Of a stretch of DNA of 64,000 nt, positions 2,811 to 26,506 are shown piece by piece. The translations under genes and the position numbers were made by a program. Where the stretch lies: positions 186,001 through 250,000 of the IMG/VR virus record IMGVR_UViG_3300025121_000282; one strand, written 5' to 3'. A model generated the notes under the pieces. That model saw only the letters and a list, made by a program, of their open reading frames with translations, ran no database searches and had not been told where the DNA came from. Within the stretch, counting starts at the first letter, position 1. Each line of letters starts with the position of its first letter.

Positions 2811-2926
2811 GTAATAATTCTACAATTTACCAAAGCACAGATTATACGCTCTCAGAGGATTGACGATGGGTGGCGAGGGGTGAAGGACCCCAGAAGAGAG
2901 AATCAATCAACTAACTGAGATGGAGA

Positions 2927-3409
2927 ATGAAAATGTCTGGTCGTCGCCCCCGAATCGTCGCTTCTTCCCTCGCCCTTCTCGCCCTTCTCGCCCCCGCGAA
3001 CGCTGCCCCTGAGGAGCAGGGGCAGGAGCCGGTCACGGATGGCCTCCCTGGACCCATCGTGACGCCCGAGCCCGAGCCGGTCCTGGAGCCCGTCTCGCCC
3101 CCCACGGCTGCTCTGCAGCAGAAGGCCCCGGCGCCCCTCTGTCTCTGCGGATGCCTCGTGCAGACCTCCTCGGTTCGTCGCCTCTTCCGCCAGGGCCACG
3201 ACGCCCGCCTCGTGGGCTTCGTCGCTCGTGGCAAGCTGGCCGATGGCTCCGAGCCGAGCCCCGAGCAGACCGCAGCGGCGAACCAGATCCGGAGTGCCAA
3301 GGCTTGGACCGCCGCCCGCCGTCTCCCGCCGGTCCTGGAGGCCGCGACCCAGGAGGAAATCTCGGCCACGGAGCAGGCGGGAGAGGCCACTGCTTCCAAC
3401 GTGGGCTGA
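2927..3409 (+). CDS. family A (CLCGC...RQGHDARLVG putative metal-binding protein), copy 1, signal-peptide-like N-terminus
   Basis: Clear paralogy with 18505..18975 and 26000..26506; promoter motif at 2860. Confidence 0.85.
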   Translation: MKMSGRRPRIVASSLALLALLAPANAAPEEQGQEPVTDGLPGPIVTPEPEPVLEPVSPPTAALQQKAPAPLCLCGCLVQTSSVRRLFRQGHDARLVGFVARGKLADGSEPSPEQTAAANQIRSAKAWTAARRLPPVLEAATQEEISATEQAGEATASNVG

Positions 3410-3439
3410 TTGACCTGTGTCCCCACCGGGTGAAGAATT

Positions 3440-3555
3440 GCAAGACCCGGCTGGAAGTCCTAACTGCAGCGGCCCCTCCCTGTTCATCCTCCCTGTTCAC
3501 AGTGAGGCCCAACATGGACCATCCAATGCTTCGGGGATTCTCAGTCGGGTCTTGT
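3440..3555 (+). ncRNA. candidate sRNA with tandem anti-SD-like CCUCCCUGUUCA seeds
   Basis: Between motifs at 3410 and 3566, no ORF; 14-bp closing stem 3440-3453/3542-3555 with two G-U pairs. Confidence 0.65.
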
Positions 3556-3636
3556 TGTATCTGGGTTGACCCGGTTTGTTTCCATGTGAAGAATTATAAG
3601 GAGGAACTATAAAATGGCCCCAGTTCACCCTGCGAT

Positions 3637-3915
3637 CCAGTACCTCAAAGACTTGAGGCTCTGAGTTGGACTTCACCCGTGCCTCGGTGTGGGTTGACCC
3701 CGACTACTGTCCGCCGAATGATGACAAGACCTTCCGGGTGGACCTCCCCAACAAAGACGTGTTTGTCATCGTTTACCTGCCCGGTGCTGTAGGCCTGAAC
3801 GGCTCGGAAGTGGGCGGGGAATACGGAGATTACGAGGAGTTCGAAAAATGAGCCTCCCCCACAACGACCCCCAAGTTCTCGGCTATTACCACCAGTACCT
3901 CAAAGACTTGAGGCT
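3637..3915 (+). repeat. 24-bp exact direct repeat CCAGTACCTCAAAGACTTGAGGCT (3637-3660, 3892-3915)
   Basis: Read directly; encodes QYLKDLRL in a 16-codon stub (3614-3664) and in ORF 3848. Confidence 0.9.
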
Positions 3916-4090
3916 GGTTCTGGGTGACCTTGAGTTTTCTCCCAACCTTAACGTGGAGAAAATCATCTGGAAGGGTGCGGAAATCGCAGCCTTGGCGGGG
4001 TACAGCGGGGCATCCAACGATGGTGGTGGTTGGAAACACGTTCTGGAGGGGACCCTGAACTTGTTGTACCGGAGATCAATCGTGGGTTGA
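3848..4090 (+). CDS. hypothetical protein
   Basis: Stop is the TGA of a TTGAC half-motif at 4087. Confidence 0.7.
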   Translation: MSLPHNDPQVLGYYHQYLKDLRLVLGDLEFSPNLNVEKIIWKGAEIAALAGYSGASNDGGGWKHVLEGTLNLLYRRSIVG

Positions 4091-5248: not shown

Positions 5249-5297
5249 GGCAACCCTGGATTGACCGGGACCGAGACAAGACGAAGAATCCCAGAGA

Positions 5298-5385
5298 GCG
5301 AGAGTGGCGAAAAACAGGAAGACGCCCTAGCTTCAGGTGCTAGGGGCTGCAAGGCACTCAGGTTCGAATCCTGACTCTCGTACCA
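5298..5385 (+). tRNA. trnL: tRNA-Leu (CAG)
   Basis: Acceptor GCGAGAG/CTCTCGT+ACCA, anticodon arm CTAGC-TTCAGGT-GCTAG, long variable arm, T arm TCAGG-TTCGAAT-CCTGA; own motif at 5261. Confidence 0.93.
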
Positions 5386-17616: not shown

Positions 17617-17667
17617 CCCCCCCCCCCCCCCCCCCCCGCAATAATGGCTGCGGGCGAGGATAGATGT
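17617..17667. repeat. C21 tract plus hairpin element copy 2
   Basis: C21 at 17617-17637, then GCAATAATGGCTGCGGGCGAGGATAGATGT. Confidence 0.85.
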
Positions 17668-18504
17668 ACCCGAATTCGCCCGTTGCGGTCCGCCTGTCAC
17701 CAGTACGTGGCATAGCTGCCCCCTCCCATCTGTACTCCCACGTGAATGCGGCTCGCACTCGCAACCGCCTATCAAACCCACACACCACTCAATTGCGCGC
17801 CCGCATCAAGTACCCACAATTTCGCAAACAGCATACACGAACACGGATGTACACGGAATCGTGTATGCTGTGCTTTCGTGTATGCCAGAACGGATGTACT
17901 GCATCACGCTCTCGCCAACACATGCAAGTGCTCACGTGAACGTACGGGCTGTCACATGTGGGCCCACACACGAGTGTGCTCAGTGTTCAAGAAAATTTGT
18001 CCACAATATCTCGTTCTGATTTCTGAAATTTGTCCGCACTGTTCCCACTCTCCCAAGACAACCACCCCAGCTTTGGAAGCCCCTCAGTTTAGAACTATTC
18101 ACCCCCTGACACCCCTCGAACCAAAGCTATTTACACGTCCACACCTAGAAACTTTCAACTTCTGGTGTGTTTATTTATACCTATGGTTCTAAAAAGCGGT
18201 CTATTATAACAAGGTGTCACCCTTTGGCCAAACCAGAGCCACAGGTTTGGGCCTGCCTTGGGTTTGGGGCTTGGGGGGGGGGAGTTGTTTTTCACCCAGT
18301 AGGGAGTGCTAGATAACCCGTATTTCGGGAGTCTCAAACCGTTGACTACCCATTGACGGAGCCCTGTAGGGGTGAAATAACTCAGAGACGGAGATTTTCT
18401 TTCCCGCCTCGAAGAGACTCCCCCCCCCCGACTAAGGATTGACGAGGCGGGATGGGGAGTGAAGAATCCCAGAGACAATCAACCGACTGAACAGGAGATT
18501 CCCA

Positions 18505-18975
18505 ATGACCACCAAGTCCACCAAGTCCACCACCAAGTCCCCCCGCGCTCCCAAGATCGTCGTCGAGAAGCTGGACGCCCTGGGCTTCCCGATTCCCGCC
18601 GCTGCGCAGGAGCCGGTCATCGTCCCGGTCGAAGAGACCAATCCGGGCGCGACCGGGGTCGCGCCCGTCGTCGTCGTCAAGGCGGTCCGAGTCGTCCCCG
18701 AGGCCCCGCTCTGCCTCTGCGGGTGCCTGACCCAGACCAGCCACCACACCCGGACCTTCCGCCAGGGCCACGACGCCCGGCTGGTGGGGATGTTCCGCAA
18801 GGCGCCCGAGGGCCTCTCGGAGGCGCAGGTCGCGGCGGCCACCCAGATCATCAACCGGAAGCTCCAGAGCGCCGCCGCGAAGCTCCCGGCCGCCTCCAAG
18901 CCCATCCTGGAGGCCGCTCCTGCAGAGCAGAACGAGACCACCAGCGACGAGGCCGCTGCTTCCAACGTGGGCTGA
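18505..18975 (+). CDS. family A (CLCGC...GHDAR) protein, copy 2
   Basis: Paralogy; motif at 18439; AGGAG RBS. Confidence 0.88.
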   Translation: MTTKSTKSTTKSPRAPKIVVEKLDALGFPIPAAAQEPVIVPVEETNPGATGVAPVVVVKAVRVVPEAPLCLCGCLTQTSHHTRTFRQGHDARLVGMFRKAPEGLSEAQVAAATQIINRKLQSAAAKLPAASKPILEAAPAEQNETTSDEAAASNVG

Positions 18976-18982
18976 TCGGCCT

Positions 18983-19007
18983 TTCGCCTCCCGGACGGAG
19001 CGGTCAA
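18983..19007 (-). promoter_or_regulatory. antisense promoter motif TTGAC-N15-GCGAA pointing into 18505..18975
   Basis: Exact motif on the - strand just after the stop codon. Confidence 0.65.
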
Positions 19008-19066
19008 TCTTTGGGTGTCCGAGCCCGGGATTGACCGCCCAAGGACCGAGGTGAATCATCCCGAGA

Positions 19067-19231
19067 TTGGCTGTTCAGAAATCGGTTCGAAACATTGAGG
19101 ATTGGCAACCACCCGGTACGTTCCGGGAAAGGGGTCAATCTTTAGGAGGTGGTTTGTCAGGACCACCAACCCAGCACATAGGCTGACACCTTTTGTGATT
19201 GGGTGCTTCGGACCGGTTTCTGAACAGCCAA
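19067..19231 (+). ncRNA. candidate structured ncRNA 1 (25-bp closing helix, multibranch core)
   Basis: 19067-19091 pairs with 19207-19231, its only non-Watson-Crick pairs being two G-U; own motif at 19031; no ORF. Confidence 0.7.
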
Positions 19232-19269
19232 ATGAGGATTGACCGCTCTGGTCTCCGAGGCGAAGAGTT

Positions 19270-19340
19270 ATGTGGGGGTACCAATCGGCCCTAGAGGCCG
19301 GGGTCCACTGATACGTAATTCAGTATTGGTACCCCCACAT
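19270..19340 (+). ncRNA. candidate ncRNA 2 (three-way junction)
   Basis: Perfect 16-bp stem 19270-19285/19325-19340 enclosing CGGCC/GGCCG and ACTGA/TCAGT hairpins; motif at 19239. Confidence 0.65.
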
Positions 19341-19378
19341 TGTCAATTGACGAGAGTCACCCTCAGGTGAAGTGTCCT

Positions 19379-19553
19379 GGAAGAGAGGACAATCCAAGCC
19401 CCCGAGCCGTGTGGCCCGCCCGACTCCGCGGTAAGGCCTGCCACCCGCTTTGGGACTCAAGGGGCCTCTCTTCCCTTTTCAACTACACCCTCATTGGTCC
19501 TTTTCAAGAGACTGGTGGGGGCGCAGTCGTATTTGGGGTTCGAAAAGGACCAA
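19379..19553 (+). ncRNA. candidate ncRNA 3 (two stem domains)
   Basis: 10-bp stem 19379-19388/19465-19474 and 12-bp stem 19494-19505/19542-19553; motif at 19347. Confidence 0.6.
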
Positions 19554-19609
19554 AACCTGGATTGACCGATTTTGTTTCCATGCGAAGAAAGACAAGGAGG
19601 AACTCAAAA

Positions 19610-19843
19610 ATGTCCAGATTCAAACCCTCGGTTTCGCAGCTGATGGAGGTCCAGCACCGGGTGGACACTCAGAATCCGTCGCAAGTGGCACTCTTCTGCC
19701 GGGTGATTGGTGCCTCGATGCTTGCCAATGCTGCTGCCTCGATTCCCTCCGTCTGGAGAGCGGCTCGGGCCCAGTTGGCCATTGAGGCCGCCACGCTCAA
19801 TGTGGTCTTGGGCATCGACCTCGAAGTGGTTTGGTGCGATTGA
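19610..19843 (+). CDS. hypothetical protein
   Basis: AAGGAGG RBS; stop inside TTGAC at 19840. Confidence 0.8.
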   Translation: MSRFKPSVSQLMEVQHRVDTQNPSQVALFCRVIGASMLANAAASIPSVWRAARAQLAIEAATLNVVLGIDLEVVWCD

Positions 19844-19900
19844 CTGATTTCGTTTCCATGTGAAGAACGACACACAATCGACAGGGAGGGGCTAAAAAAG

Positions 19901-20173
19901 ATGGCACGCTTCTACGTTCAGGCGAGTGAGTACGAGTTGATTGCGTCCCTGGACGTGGTTGTGGCCGACACCTACGAGGCCATCCAACACTTTAACCGGC
20001 ACTTCAAGGGACGGGTTGGCGGGTGGAAAGACGTGAAGAGTTCCACCCACATCGTGATCAACCTTGACAACCCCAAAGAGCACTGGTTGGGAACCGACTC
20101 CTTCAAGCGCATCTGCACCGGGTGGCGCGAAGGTCGAGAATACTGGTCGGGTCCACACTCAATCGAGTATTAA
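19901..20173 (+). CDS. hypothetical protein
   Basis: GGGAGG RBS; stop inside TTAAC at 20170. Confidence 0.8.
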   Translation: MARFYVQASEYELIASLDVVVADTYEAIQHFNRHFKGRVGGWKDVKSSTHIVINLDNPKEHWLGTDSFKRICTGWREGREYWSGPHSIEY

Positions 20174-20236
20174 CCGGTTCCATCTTCAGCTGAAAGAGAC
20201 TACGAGACACCGAACCAACTGAAAGGGGGATTCCAA

Positions 20237-20689
20237 ATGCTCAGCGAAGACCGACTCGAAGTTCTCGACCTCTACGGCTTCGGATGGAATCGCTTCTTTC
20301 AGACGGTCCACGAGCCGGACCCGGAAGTGAAGCGGTCCATGATCGGCGATGTGCTTCTCATGTGGGAGTTCGACAAGACAGGAGCCGAGTACCACTGGTA
20401 CGACCTGTTCACACGCCTCCGCCGAGACGAGCATGCGATCATCCTGGAGCAGCTGTTGGTCTTCATCGACCAGGGGTTCGTCCTCGGACCGTTCGCAGAC
20501 GACACCATCACCATCAACCCGGAAAAGCAGGAAGAACTGATGCTTTTCGTGGGTATGTGGCCGGAGGGTTTCGAGGCACCCGAGGGTGTGGAAGTTCTTC
20601 GCCTGACGGAAGAGGCCAAGGACATTCTCGAAACAGAGGGCGGAGAAGAGTACCTCATCGAGCAGGCGGTCAAAGCACTCAAGGATTGA
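20237..20689 (+). CDS. acidic hypothetical protein
   Basis: Stop inside TTGAC at 20686. Confidence 0.8.
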   Translation: MLSEDRLEVLDLYGFGWNRFFQTVHEPDPEVKRSMIGDVLLMWEFDKTGAEYHWYDLFTRLRRDEHAIILEQLLVFIDQGFVLGPFADDTITINPEKQEELMLFVGMWPEGFEAPEGVEVLRLTEEAKDILETEGGEEYLIEQAVKALKD

Positions 20690-22562: not shown

Positions 22563-22868
22563 ATGTACAAGAGTTTGGCAGAGTTTCTAGCCTCAACGAA
22601 TTTGCTGGAGAGGTTGACCAACATCGACAGGGCCCTGAATGTAAACGGGGCCCTGTGCAACCACCATGACGGTGTGGTCTTCAAAATCAACTTCGGCCCC
22701 TATACGGCGAGTTGCATGTGGCTGGATACCGTGTCGGACAACACCTGGAATGTCCAACTCTCCTACCTGGATTCAGACCACAAATACCACCCGTTCGGTG
22801 GCAGCGTTTCAACCTCTGAGTTCAAGATCGTAAAGGGTGTAGCCGAGATCTGCGGACTCGGCAATTGA
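22563..22868 (+). CDS. hypothetical protein
   Basis: AGGAG RBS; stop inside TTGAC at 22865. Confidence 0.8.
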   Translation: MYKSLAEFLASTNLLERLTNIDRALNVNGALCNHHDGVVFKINFGPYTASCMWLDTVSDNTWNVQLSYLDSDHKYHPFGGSVSTSEFKIVKGVAEICGLGN

Positions 22869-23245
22869 CGGGGTCTTCTCCGGGTGAAGAGTCCCCGAGG
22901 CGCTTTTGCCTCCCTTGTCCTCTGGGGGTTTTAACCATGCCTTCTTCCGATCTCTCCTTTTCCTTTTCCGGCCGTCCCTACCGCGCCCGCCTTCTCTCCG
23001 AGCCCGGCAAGGGTGACGCGCTGGTCTTCGGTCTCAGCCTCAACCCGAAACTGGACAAGGTCTGGGTTCTGGTGCAACGTGACGGCGCGTGGGTGCGCCC
23101 CACGGGTGAAAAGCCCTCGGCTCTGGGGCGGGCCGCAGTCGCAGCGATCGGTTGATCGGCGTTTCCGATTGACGGGGTCTTCTCCGGGTGAAGAGTCCCC
23201 GAGGCGCTTTTGCCTCCCTTGTCCTCTGGGGGTTTTAACCATGCC
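22864..23245 (+). repeat. 78-bp exact direct repeat (22864-22941, 23168-23245) comprising promoter, leader and ATG
   Basis: Read directly base for base. Confidence 0.95.
22937..23155 (+). CDS. hypothetical protein (MPSSDLSF)
   Basis: ATG inside repeat copy 1. Confidence 0.7.
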   Translation: MPSSDLSFSFSGRPYRARLLSEPGKGDALVFGLSLNPKLDKVWVLVQRDGAWVRPTGEKPSALGRAAVAAIG

Positions 23246-23820: not shown

Positions 23821-23865
23821 ATCGATTCAGCGGGATTGACCGCAGTTTTTTCGTGTGAATTACAA

Positions 23866-24051: not shown

Positions 24052-24090
24052 CCCCCCCCCTGCAATAATGGCTGCGGGCGGGGATAGATG
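24052..24090. repeat. C9 tract plus hairpin element copy 3
   Basis: GCAATAATGGCTGCGGGCGGGATAGATGT at 24062-24090. Confidence 0.85.
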
Positions 24091-24318
24091 TGTCAAACGT
24101 GTGGACACCTGCTACGCCTGTCAACGCGTCCACGCTGCATCCGCACAACCCACTCAGACGTACCCCCACGGGAGACATTCGAGCCGCACAATCCATTGTA
24201 ACCCGTTTCCACATAATAGTAAGTTGTGGTGGGTGGCAGGTTGTCCGAGGCATTTGAAAACTCACTGTTGAATCTTCCACCTGAGATTGACCCGTTTCCA
24301 TCTCGGGTGAAAAACAAC

Positions 24319-24714
24319 ATGGAAACAACATGGACCAATGAAGACGCAGCCGAAGCAGGACGAGCCTACCAAGGAGCCAACGACCCGGATTGGCAGGCAC
24401 CTGACCTGGACTGGCGGTACGAACCTGCTTTTCCAGTTGAAAAACTCATCCCGCTGATGCCGAGTGGGTTCAACGGCTGGAATTCGTGGCTGCTGGACGA
24501 GCGGCAGTGGGACGAGTCTGGAGGTACCAGTCGATGGGGCGACGAATTCACCGAGTGGTGGAAGCAACAGTCCGAGGATGAGCCCGTGGTCCTCGTGGAA
24601 TCGCACGATGGGTCCAAAATCCTTGGGATCTGGGATGGGTGGCCCCGGTCTGCGGTTTCCATCACCTCAAGGTTGCCGACCCTACCTGCCTTTGTGGGTC
24701 GGGCCAGACAATGA
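24319..24714 (+). CDS. possible degenerate ParB/Srx-like domain protein; probably leaderless
   Basis: EPVVLVE...IWDGWPR resembles the ParB DGxHR motif with H replaced by P; ATG 8 nt after GTGAA. Confidence 0.6.
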   Translation: METTWTNEDAAEAGRAYQGANDPDWQAPDLDWRYEPAFPVEKLIPLMPSGFNGWNSWLLDERQWDESGGTSRWGDEFTEWWKQQSEDEPVVLVESHDGSKILGIWDGWPRSAVSITSRLPTLPAFVGRARQ

Positions 24715-25999: not shown

Positions 26000-26506
26000 A
26001 TGGCCACCAAGTCCACCAAGAGCACCACCAAGTCCCCCCGCGCCACCCGCAAGCAGGCCGAGGTCCTCGACGCCCTCGGTTTCCCGGTCCCCGCCATCAT
26101 GGAGGCCGCTCCCGAGCCCGTCGTGGCGCCCGAGCCCGAAATCCCGGTGGTCGTGGCCGTCAAGGCCGAAAAGGCGGTCCGAGTCGTCCCCGAGGCCCCG
26201 CTCTGCCTCTGCGGCTGCCTCGTGCAGACGAGCAGCCACCTGCGGACCTTCCGCCAGGGCCATGACGCCCGGCTGGTGGGCTTCCTGGCCGCCAACGAGC
26301 GGGCGGTCGCGAAGCAGAAGGAGGCCCCTCACAACCTCTCGGAGGCGCAGATCACCGCCGCCTGCCAGATCCGGAACCGCAAGGCGGAGGCCGCCGCCGC
26401 GAAGCTCCCTTCGACCTCGTCGAAGCCCGTGCTGGAGGCCGCTCCTGCGGAGCAGAACGAAGCCGAGCAGAGCACGGACGAGCAGGACGCCGCGAACGCC
26501 GGCTGA
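26000..26506 (+). CDS. family A (CLCGC...GHDAR) protein, copy 3
   Basis: Paralogy; motif at 25929; AAGGAG RBS. Confidence 0.88.
   Translation: MATKSTKSTTKSPRATRKQAEVLDALGFPVPAIMEAAPEPVVAPEPEIPVVVAVKAEKAVRVVPEAPLCLCGCLVQTSSHLRTFRQGHDARLVGFLAANERAVAKQKEAPHNLSEAQITAACQIRNRKAEAAAAKLPSTSSKPVLEAAPAEQNEAEQSTDEQDAANAG

What the first reader, a model, noticed from the sequence alone, without database searches (positions are those of the whole stretch)
3440..3555. sRNA cassette displaying two tandem anti-Shine-Dalgarno seeds
The interval between motifs 3410 and 3566 has no ORF. It is closed by a 14-bp stem with two G-U pairs that extends further with a bulge. Inside, CCTCCCTGTTCA occurs twice (3475-3486, 3488-3499). 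Its complement TGAACAGGGAGG matches phage leaders: ACAGGGAGG (9/9) over the SD of gene 19901 and TGAACAGG before the SD of family A copy 2. C-rich anti-SD seeds are how RNAIII, RsaE and LhrC repress translation (established). Inference: a phage trans-acting translational repressor of host mRNAs or of its own cassettes.
Basis: partly seen in the sequence, partly recalled or inferred. Interest (0 to 1): 0.7.

Follow-up and report, generated by a model that had tools for sequence, protein, structure and literature searches.

The report
Orphan-promoter hairpin RNA in a jumbo phage
Between two copies of an early promoter, a 315-kb groundwater phage has a gene-less stretch that should give a very stable hairpin RNA of about 110-140 nt. 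It is a reasonable small-RNA candidate, but its two repeated C-rich "seeds" are predicted to lie mostly inside the hairpin, and nothing here shows that they repress translation.

Summary
CCTCCCTGTTCA occurs twice in tandem (3475-3486, 3488-3499). It sits inside a long imperfect hairpin (3440-3555) with a 14/15-bp basal stem. The hairpin lies between two copies of a promoter motif (3410-3438, 3566-3594). That motif occurs about 54 times in this early region and also precedes a tRNA-Leu gene.

The window is part of a 314,886-bp jumbo phage from groundwater metagenomes. The RNA fold is far better than shuffles on the + strand (z -4.7) and weaker on the - strand (z -2.3). No Rfam family, tRNA, paralogue or homologue was found.

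The anti-Shine-Dalgarno reading is weak:
- Both CCUCC cores are predicted to pair inside the hairpin, with GAGG 3504-3507 and AACAUGGA 3511-3518. Opening them costs 5-9 kcal/mol.
- A natural variant strain changes the sixth base of both repeats (C to A) with no compensating change in either proposed target.

Short tandem duplications and short-patch conversion are common in this phage, so the identical repeats need no selection.

Best reading: an ORF-less early unit making a structured non-coding RNA, role unproven. No RNA data could be obtained.

The parts
3410..3438 (+). Orphan early promoter: TTGACC, a 17-nt spacer, AAGAAT, with GTG before the -10. The predicted start is about 3444-3446.
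   Evidence: The same motif stands 10-40 nt before an RBS and ORF at most of its ~54 copies, and 8 nt before tRNA-Leu (5261 -> 5298).
3440..3555 (+). Long imperfect hairpin. The lower helix has 15 + 6 bp. The upper part is made of short 2-4 bp helices, and the apical loop is UUCA (3496-3499).
   Evidence: The + strand folds at z -4.74 and the - strand at z -2.31. The three G.U pairs of the lower stem favour the + strand RNA.
3475..3486 (+). Repeat copy 1 (CCTCCCTGTTCA). U3477-C3479 pair with G3516-A3518, and U3481-U3484 pair with A3511-A3514. C3480 faces U3515.
   Evidence: The variant allele has A at 3480, which gives a perfect 8-bp helix.
3488..3499 (+). Repeat copy 2. C3488-C3491 pair with GAGG 3504-3507, and C3493-G3495 pair with C3500-G3502. 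Its last four bases form the apical loop.
   Evidence: The variant allele has A at 3493, which breaks the C3493-G3502 pair.
3504..3518 (+). The 3' arm partner of the repeats: GAGG, 6 nt, then ATG 3514. It reads like an SD plus start codon of a 32-codon frame (3514-3612), but it is fully sequestered.
   Evidence: The frame runs through the next promoter and RBS. It has no homologues and is judged spurious.
3561..3584 (+). Small stem-loop (5 bp, about -6 kcal/mol) followed by a T-run. It overlaps the -35 of the next promoter and is the likely 3' end of the RNA.
   Evidence: Terminator-like hit; fold.
3566..3594 (+). Second copy of the early promoter. It drives the RBS at 3600 and the ATG at 3615.
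   Evidence: (families D1, D19).
3615..3851 (+). Downstream gene. It is an intact 78-codon gene in the variant strain. In the window it is cut after 16 codons by a short replaced patch (3649-3656) copied from 3893-3916.

Best explanation
This is an ORF-less early transcription unit of an uncultivated jumbo phage.

Inferred from sequence only:
- The host sigma-70-type polymerase starts at the orphan promoter (3410-3438), at about 3445.
- The transcript folds into a roughly 110-nt hairpin whose 5' and 3' ends pair.
- Transcription ends, at least partly, at the small stem-loop plus T-run that overlaps the next promoter. The product is a discrete, nuclease-resistant RNA of about 110-140 nt.

Shown by folding: the tandem 12-mer belongs to the 5' arm of the hairpin. 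Copy 2 pairs with GAGG and copy 1 with AACAUGGA of the 3' arm.

Inferred: the duplicate arose by 13-bp slippage and is kept identical by slippage or short-patch conversion, both of which are visibly active in this phage.

The RNA therefore most likely works through its folded shape. The 21-bp lower helix would suit a stable structured RNA, a double-strand-specific nuclease site or a protein-binding site. It would also insulate the upstream gene's transcripts from the next cassette. It probably does not work by displaying free anti-SD seeds. The biological role is not established.
For: - Promoter: an exact consensus copy. The motif is overwhelmingly followed by an RBS and ORF, or by tRNA-Leu, at the right distance.
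- Only a handful of the ~54 copies lack an ORF behind them. Three others (19031, 19239, 19347) are also followed by sequences closed by long terminal stems. One of these has z = -11.
- Fold: z -4.74 on +, -2.31 on -.
- The repeats are paired in the ensemble.
- The variant A3480 turns a C.U mismatch into a perfect 8-bp helix.
- The genome has 18 short tandem duplications against 0 in shuffles. A short conversion patch lies 150 nt downstream in the same strain comparison.
- A terminator-like stem-loop sits at 3561-3574.
Against: - No transcript data. No listed RNA run holds the stretch.
- Only two alleles are known and there are no distant homologues, so covariation cannot be tested.
- The hairpin carries 2 changes in 121 nt against about 2% in the flanks, so there is no sign of extra constraint.
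- The basal 5 bp of the stem lie upstream of the predicted start. The full stem would therefore form only in read-through transcripts.
- The large hairpin itself lacks a U-tail.
- An orphan promoter could be a leftover of cassette shuffling.
Confidence: 0.45

Rival explanations
1. One reading: a trans-acting small RNA whose two CCUCC-containing repeats pair with Shine-Dalgarno regions of phage (or host) mRNAs and block translation initiation.
For: - It has the layout of a separate transcription unit.
- There is 12-nt perfect complementarity to the SD region of gene 19901, which extends to a 14-pair duplex of -30.5 kcal/mol. This is rarer than in random constructs with two CCUCC cores (10 of 300).
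- The CCUCC core itself is kept in both alleles.
- The two repeats changed together, which selection on two equivalent seeds could explain.
Against: - The seeds are predicted to be paired. Opening costs 5-9 kcal/mol, about as much as a bare CCUCC/GGAGG duplex yields.
- The variant allele breaks the extended pairing with both proposed leaders, and the leaders are unchanged in the same runs.
- Other 12-nt matches to the element occur at chance frequency across the genome.
- Neither proposed leader ranks among the 25 best windows of a genome-wide duplex scan.
- The RNA has a closed 5'/3' hairpin shape, unlike known C-rich-seed sRNAs.
- The phage has no Hfq.
- The host is unknown, so host targets could not be tested.
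Confidence: 0.2
2. A neutral leftover. Recombination between repeated promoter cassettes left two promoters 156 bp apart. Between them lies a fossil inverted repeat that later acquired a slippage duplication. The RNA may be made but has no role.
For: - The region is a mosaic of about 54 promoter-fronted small ORFans with paralogous cassettes.
- Tandem promoters without an ORF between them also occur at 18353/18439 and 25842/25929.
- Conversion and slippage are frequent.
- The element is confined to one phage lineage.
- It shows no lower substitution rate than its flanks.
Against: - The fold is much more stable than shuffles, and asymmetrically so on the transcribed strand through G.U pairs. 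A decaying DNA palindrome would not be expected to do this.
- Both promoters keep the full consensus.
- Sister ORF-less units are even more elaborately structured.
Confidence: 0.2
3. A structured leader controlling a 32-codon small ORF (ATG 3514 to TAA 3612). Its SD-like GAGG and start codon are masked by the two repeat copies, so translation would need the hairpin to open.
For: GAGG lies 6 nt before the ATG. Both are paired with the repeats, and the frame ends 2 nt before the next gene's ATG.
Against: - The frame is dictated by the hairpin's 3' arm, the next promoter and the next RBS.
- Its only difference between strains is non-synonymous.
- The GAGG and AUG are simply the complement of the repeat unit.
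- No homologues exist for anything in this interval.
Confidence: 0.05
4. A DNA-level element: two direct 12-bp repeats that act as the binding site of a phage or host DNA-binding protein acting on the neighbouring promoters.
For: Two identical direct repeats that changed together in a variant. They lie about 65-90 bp upstream of the next promoter's predicted start.
Against: - There is no other copy of the motif near any of the ~54 promoters. Matches with up to 2 mismatches occur at chance level.
- A 13-bp spacing puts the two sites on different faces of the helix.
- The G.U-dependent strand asymmetry points to an RNA-level feature.
Confidence: 0.05

Closest known systems
   Same: A short non-coding unit with repeated C-rich CCUCC motifs that are complementary to SD sequences.
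   Different: In those RNAs the C-rich motifs sit in loops or unpaired stretches and a U-tailed terminator hairpin follows. Here the motifs are inside helices of a hairpin whose two ends pair. There is no sequence or structure match to any Rfam family. The element is phage-borne and limited to one lineage.
Phage-encoded small RNAs, for example the lambda-type sRNA supporting lytic replication (bioRxiv 10.1101/2024.10.31.621285) and the phiKZ transcriptome map (PMC8244752); also the stable RNAs next to the T4 tRNA cluster (from memory)
   Same: A small non-coding RNA made from a phage promoter early in infection and located near a phage tRNA gene.
   Different: There is no homology and no expression data. 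The function of this one is unknown.
PeSL composite promoter/terminator cassettes of T4-type phages (PMC2839356, PMC4122927)
   Same: A conserved early-promoter motif is repeated in front of nearly every small ORF of a variable region. The promoter at 3566 carries a stem-loop plus T-run over its -35.
   Different: Across the 54 promoters the -35 region folds no better than shuffles, so the stem-loop part of the definition is not generally met. The large hairpin at 3440-3555 is not part of a PeSL.
RNase III processing hairpins between phage early genes (T7 early region, lambda sib); from general knowledge
   Same: A long, nearly perfect double-stranded lower helix (15 + 6 bp) with internal loops above it, lying in an intergenic part of a phage early region.
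   Different: It has its own promoter directly in front and is about twice as long as T7 sites. The phage encodes no RNase III. Cleavage could not be tested.

Membership tests
Trans-acting anti-SD (C-rich seed) sRNA | Own promoter and terminator, with no ORF | tested here: met
   By sequence only: a consensus promoter at 3410-3438, a terminator-like stem-loop plus T-run at 3561-3584, and no credible ORF.
Trans-acting anti-SD (C-rich seed) sRNA | C-rich seeds exposed in loops or single-stranded regions | tested here: not met
   In the predicted ensemble the unpaired probability is about 0 for 3477-3479 and 3488-3491. Opening costs 4.9-8.1 kcal/mol per CCUCC. This is prediction, not probing.
Trans-acting anti-SD (C-rich seed) sRNA | Target complementarity beyond chance and maintained in evolution | tested here: inconclusive
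   The 12-nt match to the 19901 SD has p about 0.03. The variant allele breaks it without compensation. Host targets could not be tested.
Trans-acting anti-SD (C-rich seed) sRNA | A discrete transcript of the expected size | not testable with these tools
Any described RNA family (Rfam 15), tRNA or tmRNA | Match to a covariance model, or a cloverleaf | tested here: not met
   No hit at gathering scores over the whole window, and only chance-level hits at E up to 10 in 3300-3700. ARAGORN finds only tRNA-Leu at 5298-5385.
PeSL promoter/stem-loop cassette | Conserved early promoter repeated before the ORFs of a variable region | tested here: met
   About 54 copies in window 2860-28630, most of them 10-40 nt before an RBS and ORF.
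PeSL promoter/stem-loop cassette | Stem-loop (terminator) joined to each promoter | tested here: not met
   Mean MFE around the -35 is -4.3 kcal/mol against -4.07 for shuffles. A stem-loop is present at some copies, including 3566.
Intrinsic terminator | G+C-rich stem directly followed by a U-run | tested here: inconclusive
   The large hairpin is followed by UGUAUC, which is a poor tail. The small stem-loop at 3561-3574 is followed by TTTGTTTCC and passes the scan.
RNase III substrate | About two turns of double-stranded RNA | tested here: met
   15 + 6 bp interrupted by one 1x1 loop. Cleavage itself cannot be tested. The phage has no RNase III gene.
Type III antitoxin (ToxI-like) repeat RNA | Tandem repeats of about 34-36 nt next to a toxin gene | tested here: not met
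   Two repeats of 13 nt. The neighbours are ORFans with no Pfam match.

The most novel reading that the evidence does not exclude
The RNA is a genuine early riboregulator of a huge phage. Its two identical seeds would be kept identical by selection because they act as a pair.

They could clamp SD or start regions of phage early mRNAs. Candidates are the gene-19901 leader and the 5' end of the 24287 promoter's transcript. That 5' end carries AACAUGGA twice in tandem, which is perfectly complementary to both repeats of the variant allele. Alternatively they could titrate SD-rich host mRNAs.

Together with the neighbouring orphan-promoter RNAs at 19031-19560, it would then belong to an undescribed set of structured early RNAs in jumbo phages.
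Probability: 0.15. Interest if true: 0.65.

Novelty: new member of a known kind. Interest (0 to 1): 0.35.

Why it matters
Non-coding RNAs of huge, uncultivated phages are almost unknown. An early region in which nearly every gene has its own promoter makes promoter-only units easy to spot, so it gives a way to find such RNAs from sequence alone.

If this hairpin and its more elaborate neighbours are real stable RNAs, they are entry points to post-transcriptional control of host take-over in jumbo phages.

As it stands, the finding is a well-delimited candidate with a testable allele pair (C/C against A/A). It is not evidence for anti-SD regulation.

Tried and rejected
- Homologue searches found only the same phage population. 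I tried megablast against phage records, two exact or degenerate pattern scans of IMG/VR and protein-anchored scans of IMG/VR and JGI metagenomes.
- Further homologue searches gave the same result: a protein search with the downstream gene plus contig look-up, and DNA and covariance-model searches of five distant relatives at about 35% protein identity.
- A pattern scan of 185,579 prokaryote genomes gave one hit, in a Faecousia MAG. It has no flanking similarity and lies antisense to an apparent coding start, so I judged it chance.
- Rfam gave nothing. The covariance model found no paralogue in the phage itself.
- The RNA run search listed none that holds the stretch.
- The genome-wide duplex scan was dominated by long-loop artefacts and a poly-C/poly-G tract, and gave no clear target.
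- The phage has no RNase III, Hfq, bS21 or Ro/TROVE gene. That removes cheap support for processing, chaperone, ribosome-tuning or Y-RNA readings.
- I considered a minus-strand gene: the public gene call on L037 takes the 194-codon minus-strand ORF that starts inside the repeat. I rejected it because 12 of 18 variable columns between the three plus-strand paralogues fall on third codon positions of the plus frame.
- I considered common descent of the 3' arm and the 5' end of the 24287 transcript, which share 12 identical nt. I did not claim it, because 12-nt matches occur at chance frequency.

Full report
**Context**

The window is bases 186,001-250,000 of a 314,886-bp virus record rated complete. 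It is found in several groundwater metagenomes. Its structural proteins have only about 35% identity to other huge-phage contigs, and it carries a GroEL-like gene and baseplate-like genes. The first 28 kb of the window have 52-59% G+C, against 42-48% for the rest.

That first part is packed with small plus-strand ORFans that have no Pfam match. Nearly every one is preceded by the same promoter-like motif: TTGAC(C), a 17-18-nt spacer, then (GTG)AAGAAT. I counted about 54 copies, and most stand 10-40 nt before an RBS and start codon. One copy (5261-5289) stands 8 nt before the only tRNA gene of the window, tRNA-Leu(CAG) at 5298-5385. The motif is therefore very probably the phage's early promoter, read by a sigma-70-type host polymerase. 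That is inference from position and consensus.

**The observation**

- The 12-mer occurs at 3475-3486 and 3488-3499.
- The interval is bounded by two full-consensus promoter copies, at 3410-3438 and 3566-3594.
- The stretch 3440-3555 folds into one long imperfect hairpin. Its lower stem has 15 bp (3440-3454 / 3541-3555, three G.U pairs), followed by a 1x1 loop, 6 more pairs, and then a series of 2-4-bp helices up to a UUCA loop.
- The fold reaches -55.8 kcal/mol, z = -4.74, and none of 200 shuffles folds as well. The complementary strand folds less well (-49.8 kcal/mol, z = -2.31). G.U pairs read as RNA on the plus strand would produce exactly this asymmetry.
- A short stem-loop with a T-run (3561-3584) follows and overlaps the -35 of the next promoter.

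The interval is not literally ORF-free. The only frame that starts behind the predicted transcription start is a 32-codon frame from ATG 3514. Its sequence is dictated by the hairpin's 3' arm, the next promoter and the next RBS.

**Is it an RNA gene?**

Among the ~54 promoter copies, only a few are not followed by an ORF: this one, the tRNA promoter, three units at 19031, 19239 and 19347, and one at 23836. The three units at 19031-19560 are each followed by a sequence closed by a long terminal stem. The largest (19067-19232) has a 25-bp closing stem and a four-way junction, and folds at -97.6 kcal/mol with z = -11.

So this phage seems to place structured, ORF-less units behind its early promoter more than once. 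That makes a discrete RNA product the most economical reading for 3440-3555.

Two cautions apply. First, the five basal pairs of the stem (3440-3444) lie upstream of the predicted start at about 3445. The complete stem would therefore form only in read-through transcripts from the upstream gene. Transcripts from 3410 would still fold at about -45 kcal/mol. Second, no RNA data could be obtained, because no listed RNA run holds the stretch.

**Where the repeats sit**

In the minimum-energy and ensemble structures:
- Copy 2 pairs through CCUC with GAGG 3504-3507, and through CUG with CAG 3500-3502.
- Copy 1 pairs through UCC and UGUU with GGA and AACA of 3511-3518.
- Only C3475-C3476 and a few bulged bases are free.

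Forcing either CCUCC open costs 4.9-5.6 kcal/mol. Opening the 12-nt site that matches gene 19901 costs 8.8 kcal/mol. The SD-like GAGG and the ATG in the 3' arm are simply the complement of the repeat unit. For that reason I do not take the 32-codon frame seriously.

**Natural variation**

Contigs from two sequencing runs (X9, X11) and a JGI contig (L028) carry a second allele about 2% diverged over 1.4 kb. Inside the hairpin it differs at exactly two positions, 3480 and 3493. Both are C to A, and both are the sixth base of a repeat copy. An ENA contig (L037) carries the reference allele.

The change at 3480 converts a C.U mismatch into a perfect 8-bp helix, UCCAUGUU / AACAUGGA. The change at 3493 breaks a C-G pair in the apical hairpin. 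Overall stability is similar, -46.9 against -45.4 kcal/mol.

The concerted change shows that the two copies do not evolve independently. This does not require selection:
- The genome has 18 short tandem duplications where shuffled genomes have none.
- About 150 nt downstream, the same strain comparison shows a short patch (3649-3656) overwritten from a paralogous stretch at 3893-3916. In the window's strain this truncates a gene that is an intact 78 codons in the variant.

**Test of the trans-target idea**

It is 12 perfect nt (19881-19892 with 3472-3483) and extends to a 14-pair duplex of -30.5 kcal/mol. I built 300 random constructs that kept two CCUCC cores. Ten of them reached a 12-nt match to some predicted translation-initiation region, giving p about 0.03. 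Several unrelated 12-nt matches to other parts of the element exist in the genome, as expected by chance.

The A/A allele interrupts this duplex (-23.9 kcal/mol) and shortens the match to the gene-18505 leader. In the same runs both leaders are unchanged: X9 and X11 contigs span 19862-20239 and 18420-18708 with no difference at those sites. A sliding duplex scan of both genome strands produced no outstanding partner for either allele. The host is unknown, so host targets remain untested.

One observation is recorded but not claimed. The 5' end of the transcript from promoter 24287 carries AACAACATGGA twice in tandem (24312-24334). AACAUGGA is perfectly complementary to both repeats of the A/A allele, and the sequence is identical in the variant sample. 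The predicted duplex is only -21 kcal/mol, and the reference allele mismatches both sites.

**Comparison with known systems**

No Rfam family matches, even at permissive thresholds. A covariance model of the hairpin finds nothing else in the phage or in five distant relatives. The relatives do not share the promoter motif either.

The region as a whole resembles the PeSL cassettes of T4-type phages, which are repeated early promoter/terminator modules in variable regions (PMC2839356, PMC4122927). However, a stem-loop at the -35 is not a general feature here.

The hairpin's lower helix would suit RNase III, but the phage encodes none. It also encodes no Hfq, bS21 or Ro. Phage-encoded small RNAs are an established kind (for example bioRxiv 10.1101/2024.10.31.621285 and PMC8244752). 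This would be a new, unrelated member of that kind.

**Verdict**

The specific mechanism of tandem anti-SD seeds acting in trans is weakly supported, at about 0.2. The seeds are predicted to be helical, target complementarity is marginal, and the one natural experiment available shows no compensation. A neutral remnant of cassette shuffling cannot be excluded (about 0.2).

Interest is moderate to low without expression data. The allele pair and the neighbouring, far more structured orphan-promoter units give concrete experiments.

Noticed in passing
window 18976-19610: A roughly 630-nt ORF-poor stretch after paralogue gene 18505-18975. It holds three to four promoter copies, each followed by a sequence closed by a long terminal stem. 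The stretch 19067-19232 has a 25-bp closing stem and a four-way junction (-97.6 kcal/mol, z -11 on +, -7.4 on -). The stretch 19270-19340 has a 16-bp perfect stem. There is no Rfam match. These may be more interesting ncRNA candidates than the finding itself.
   Followed up: partly
window 2860-28630: About 54 copies of one early-promoter motif sit in front of nearly every small ORFan. G+C here is 52-59%, against 42-48% in the rest of the phage. The layout resembles PeSL regions, but without a general stem-loop at the -35.
   Followed up: partly
window 3615-3851 and 3893-3916: The gene behind the second promoter is an intact 78 codons in the variant strain (L028). In the window it stops after 16 codons, because an 8-nt patch (3649-3656) was overwritten by the paralogous stretch of the next gene. 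This is evidence of short-patch conversion.
   Followed up: yes
window 24312-24334: AACAACATGGA occurs twice in tandem at the 5' end of the unit behind promoter 24287. Its core AACAUGGA is complementary to both repeats of the A/A allele and identical to 3511-3518. The predicted start falls at or after the first ATG (24319), so the true start of that gene is unclear.
   Followed up: partly
window 22864-22941 and 23168-23245: Two 100% identical 78-nt promoter-plus-leader copies stand in front of two different genes. The leader forms a hairpin that masks the G-rich SD-like run and shows CCUCCC in its loop.
   Followed up: no
window 2933-3409, 18505-18975, 26000-26506: Three paralogues of an ORFan family with an invariant CLCGC ... 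FRQGHDARLVG block. The public gene call on the ENA contig takes the minus-strand shadow ORF (2903-3487) instead. Third-codon-position variation supports the plus strand.
   Followed up: yes
G000 284600-284674 (outside the window), minus strand: ARAGORN calls a tRNA with anticodon CUA (labelled Pyl), that is, an amber-suppressor-type tRNA. This raises the possibility of TAG read-through in part of this phage. There are eight tRNAs in all.
   Followed up: no
window 17617-17637 and about 24055-24065: Poly-C runs (21 C at 17617) are each followed by a shared element of about 30 nt (GCAATAATGGCTGCGGGCG.GGATAGATGT). The second one lies in a roughly 450-nt ORF-poor stretch behind promoter 23836.
   Followed up: no
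L040 7181-7205 (Faecousia MAG): The only exact match to the degenerate double-repeat pattern in 185,579 prokaryote genomes. It has no flanking similarity and lies antisense to an apparent coding start. I judged it chance, although the naive expectation is only about 0.02 hits.
   Followed up: partly
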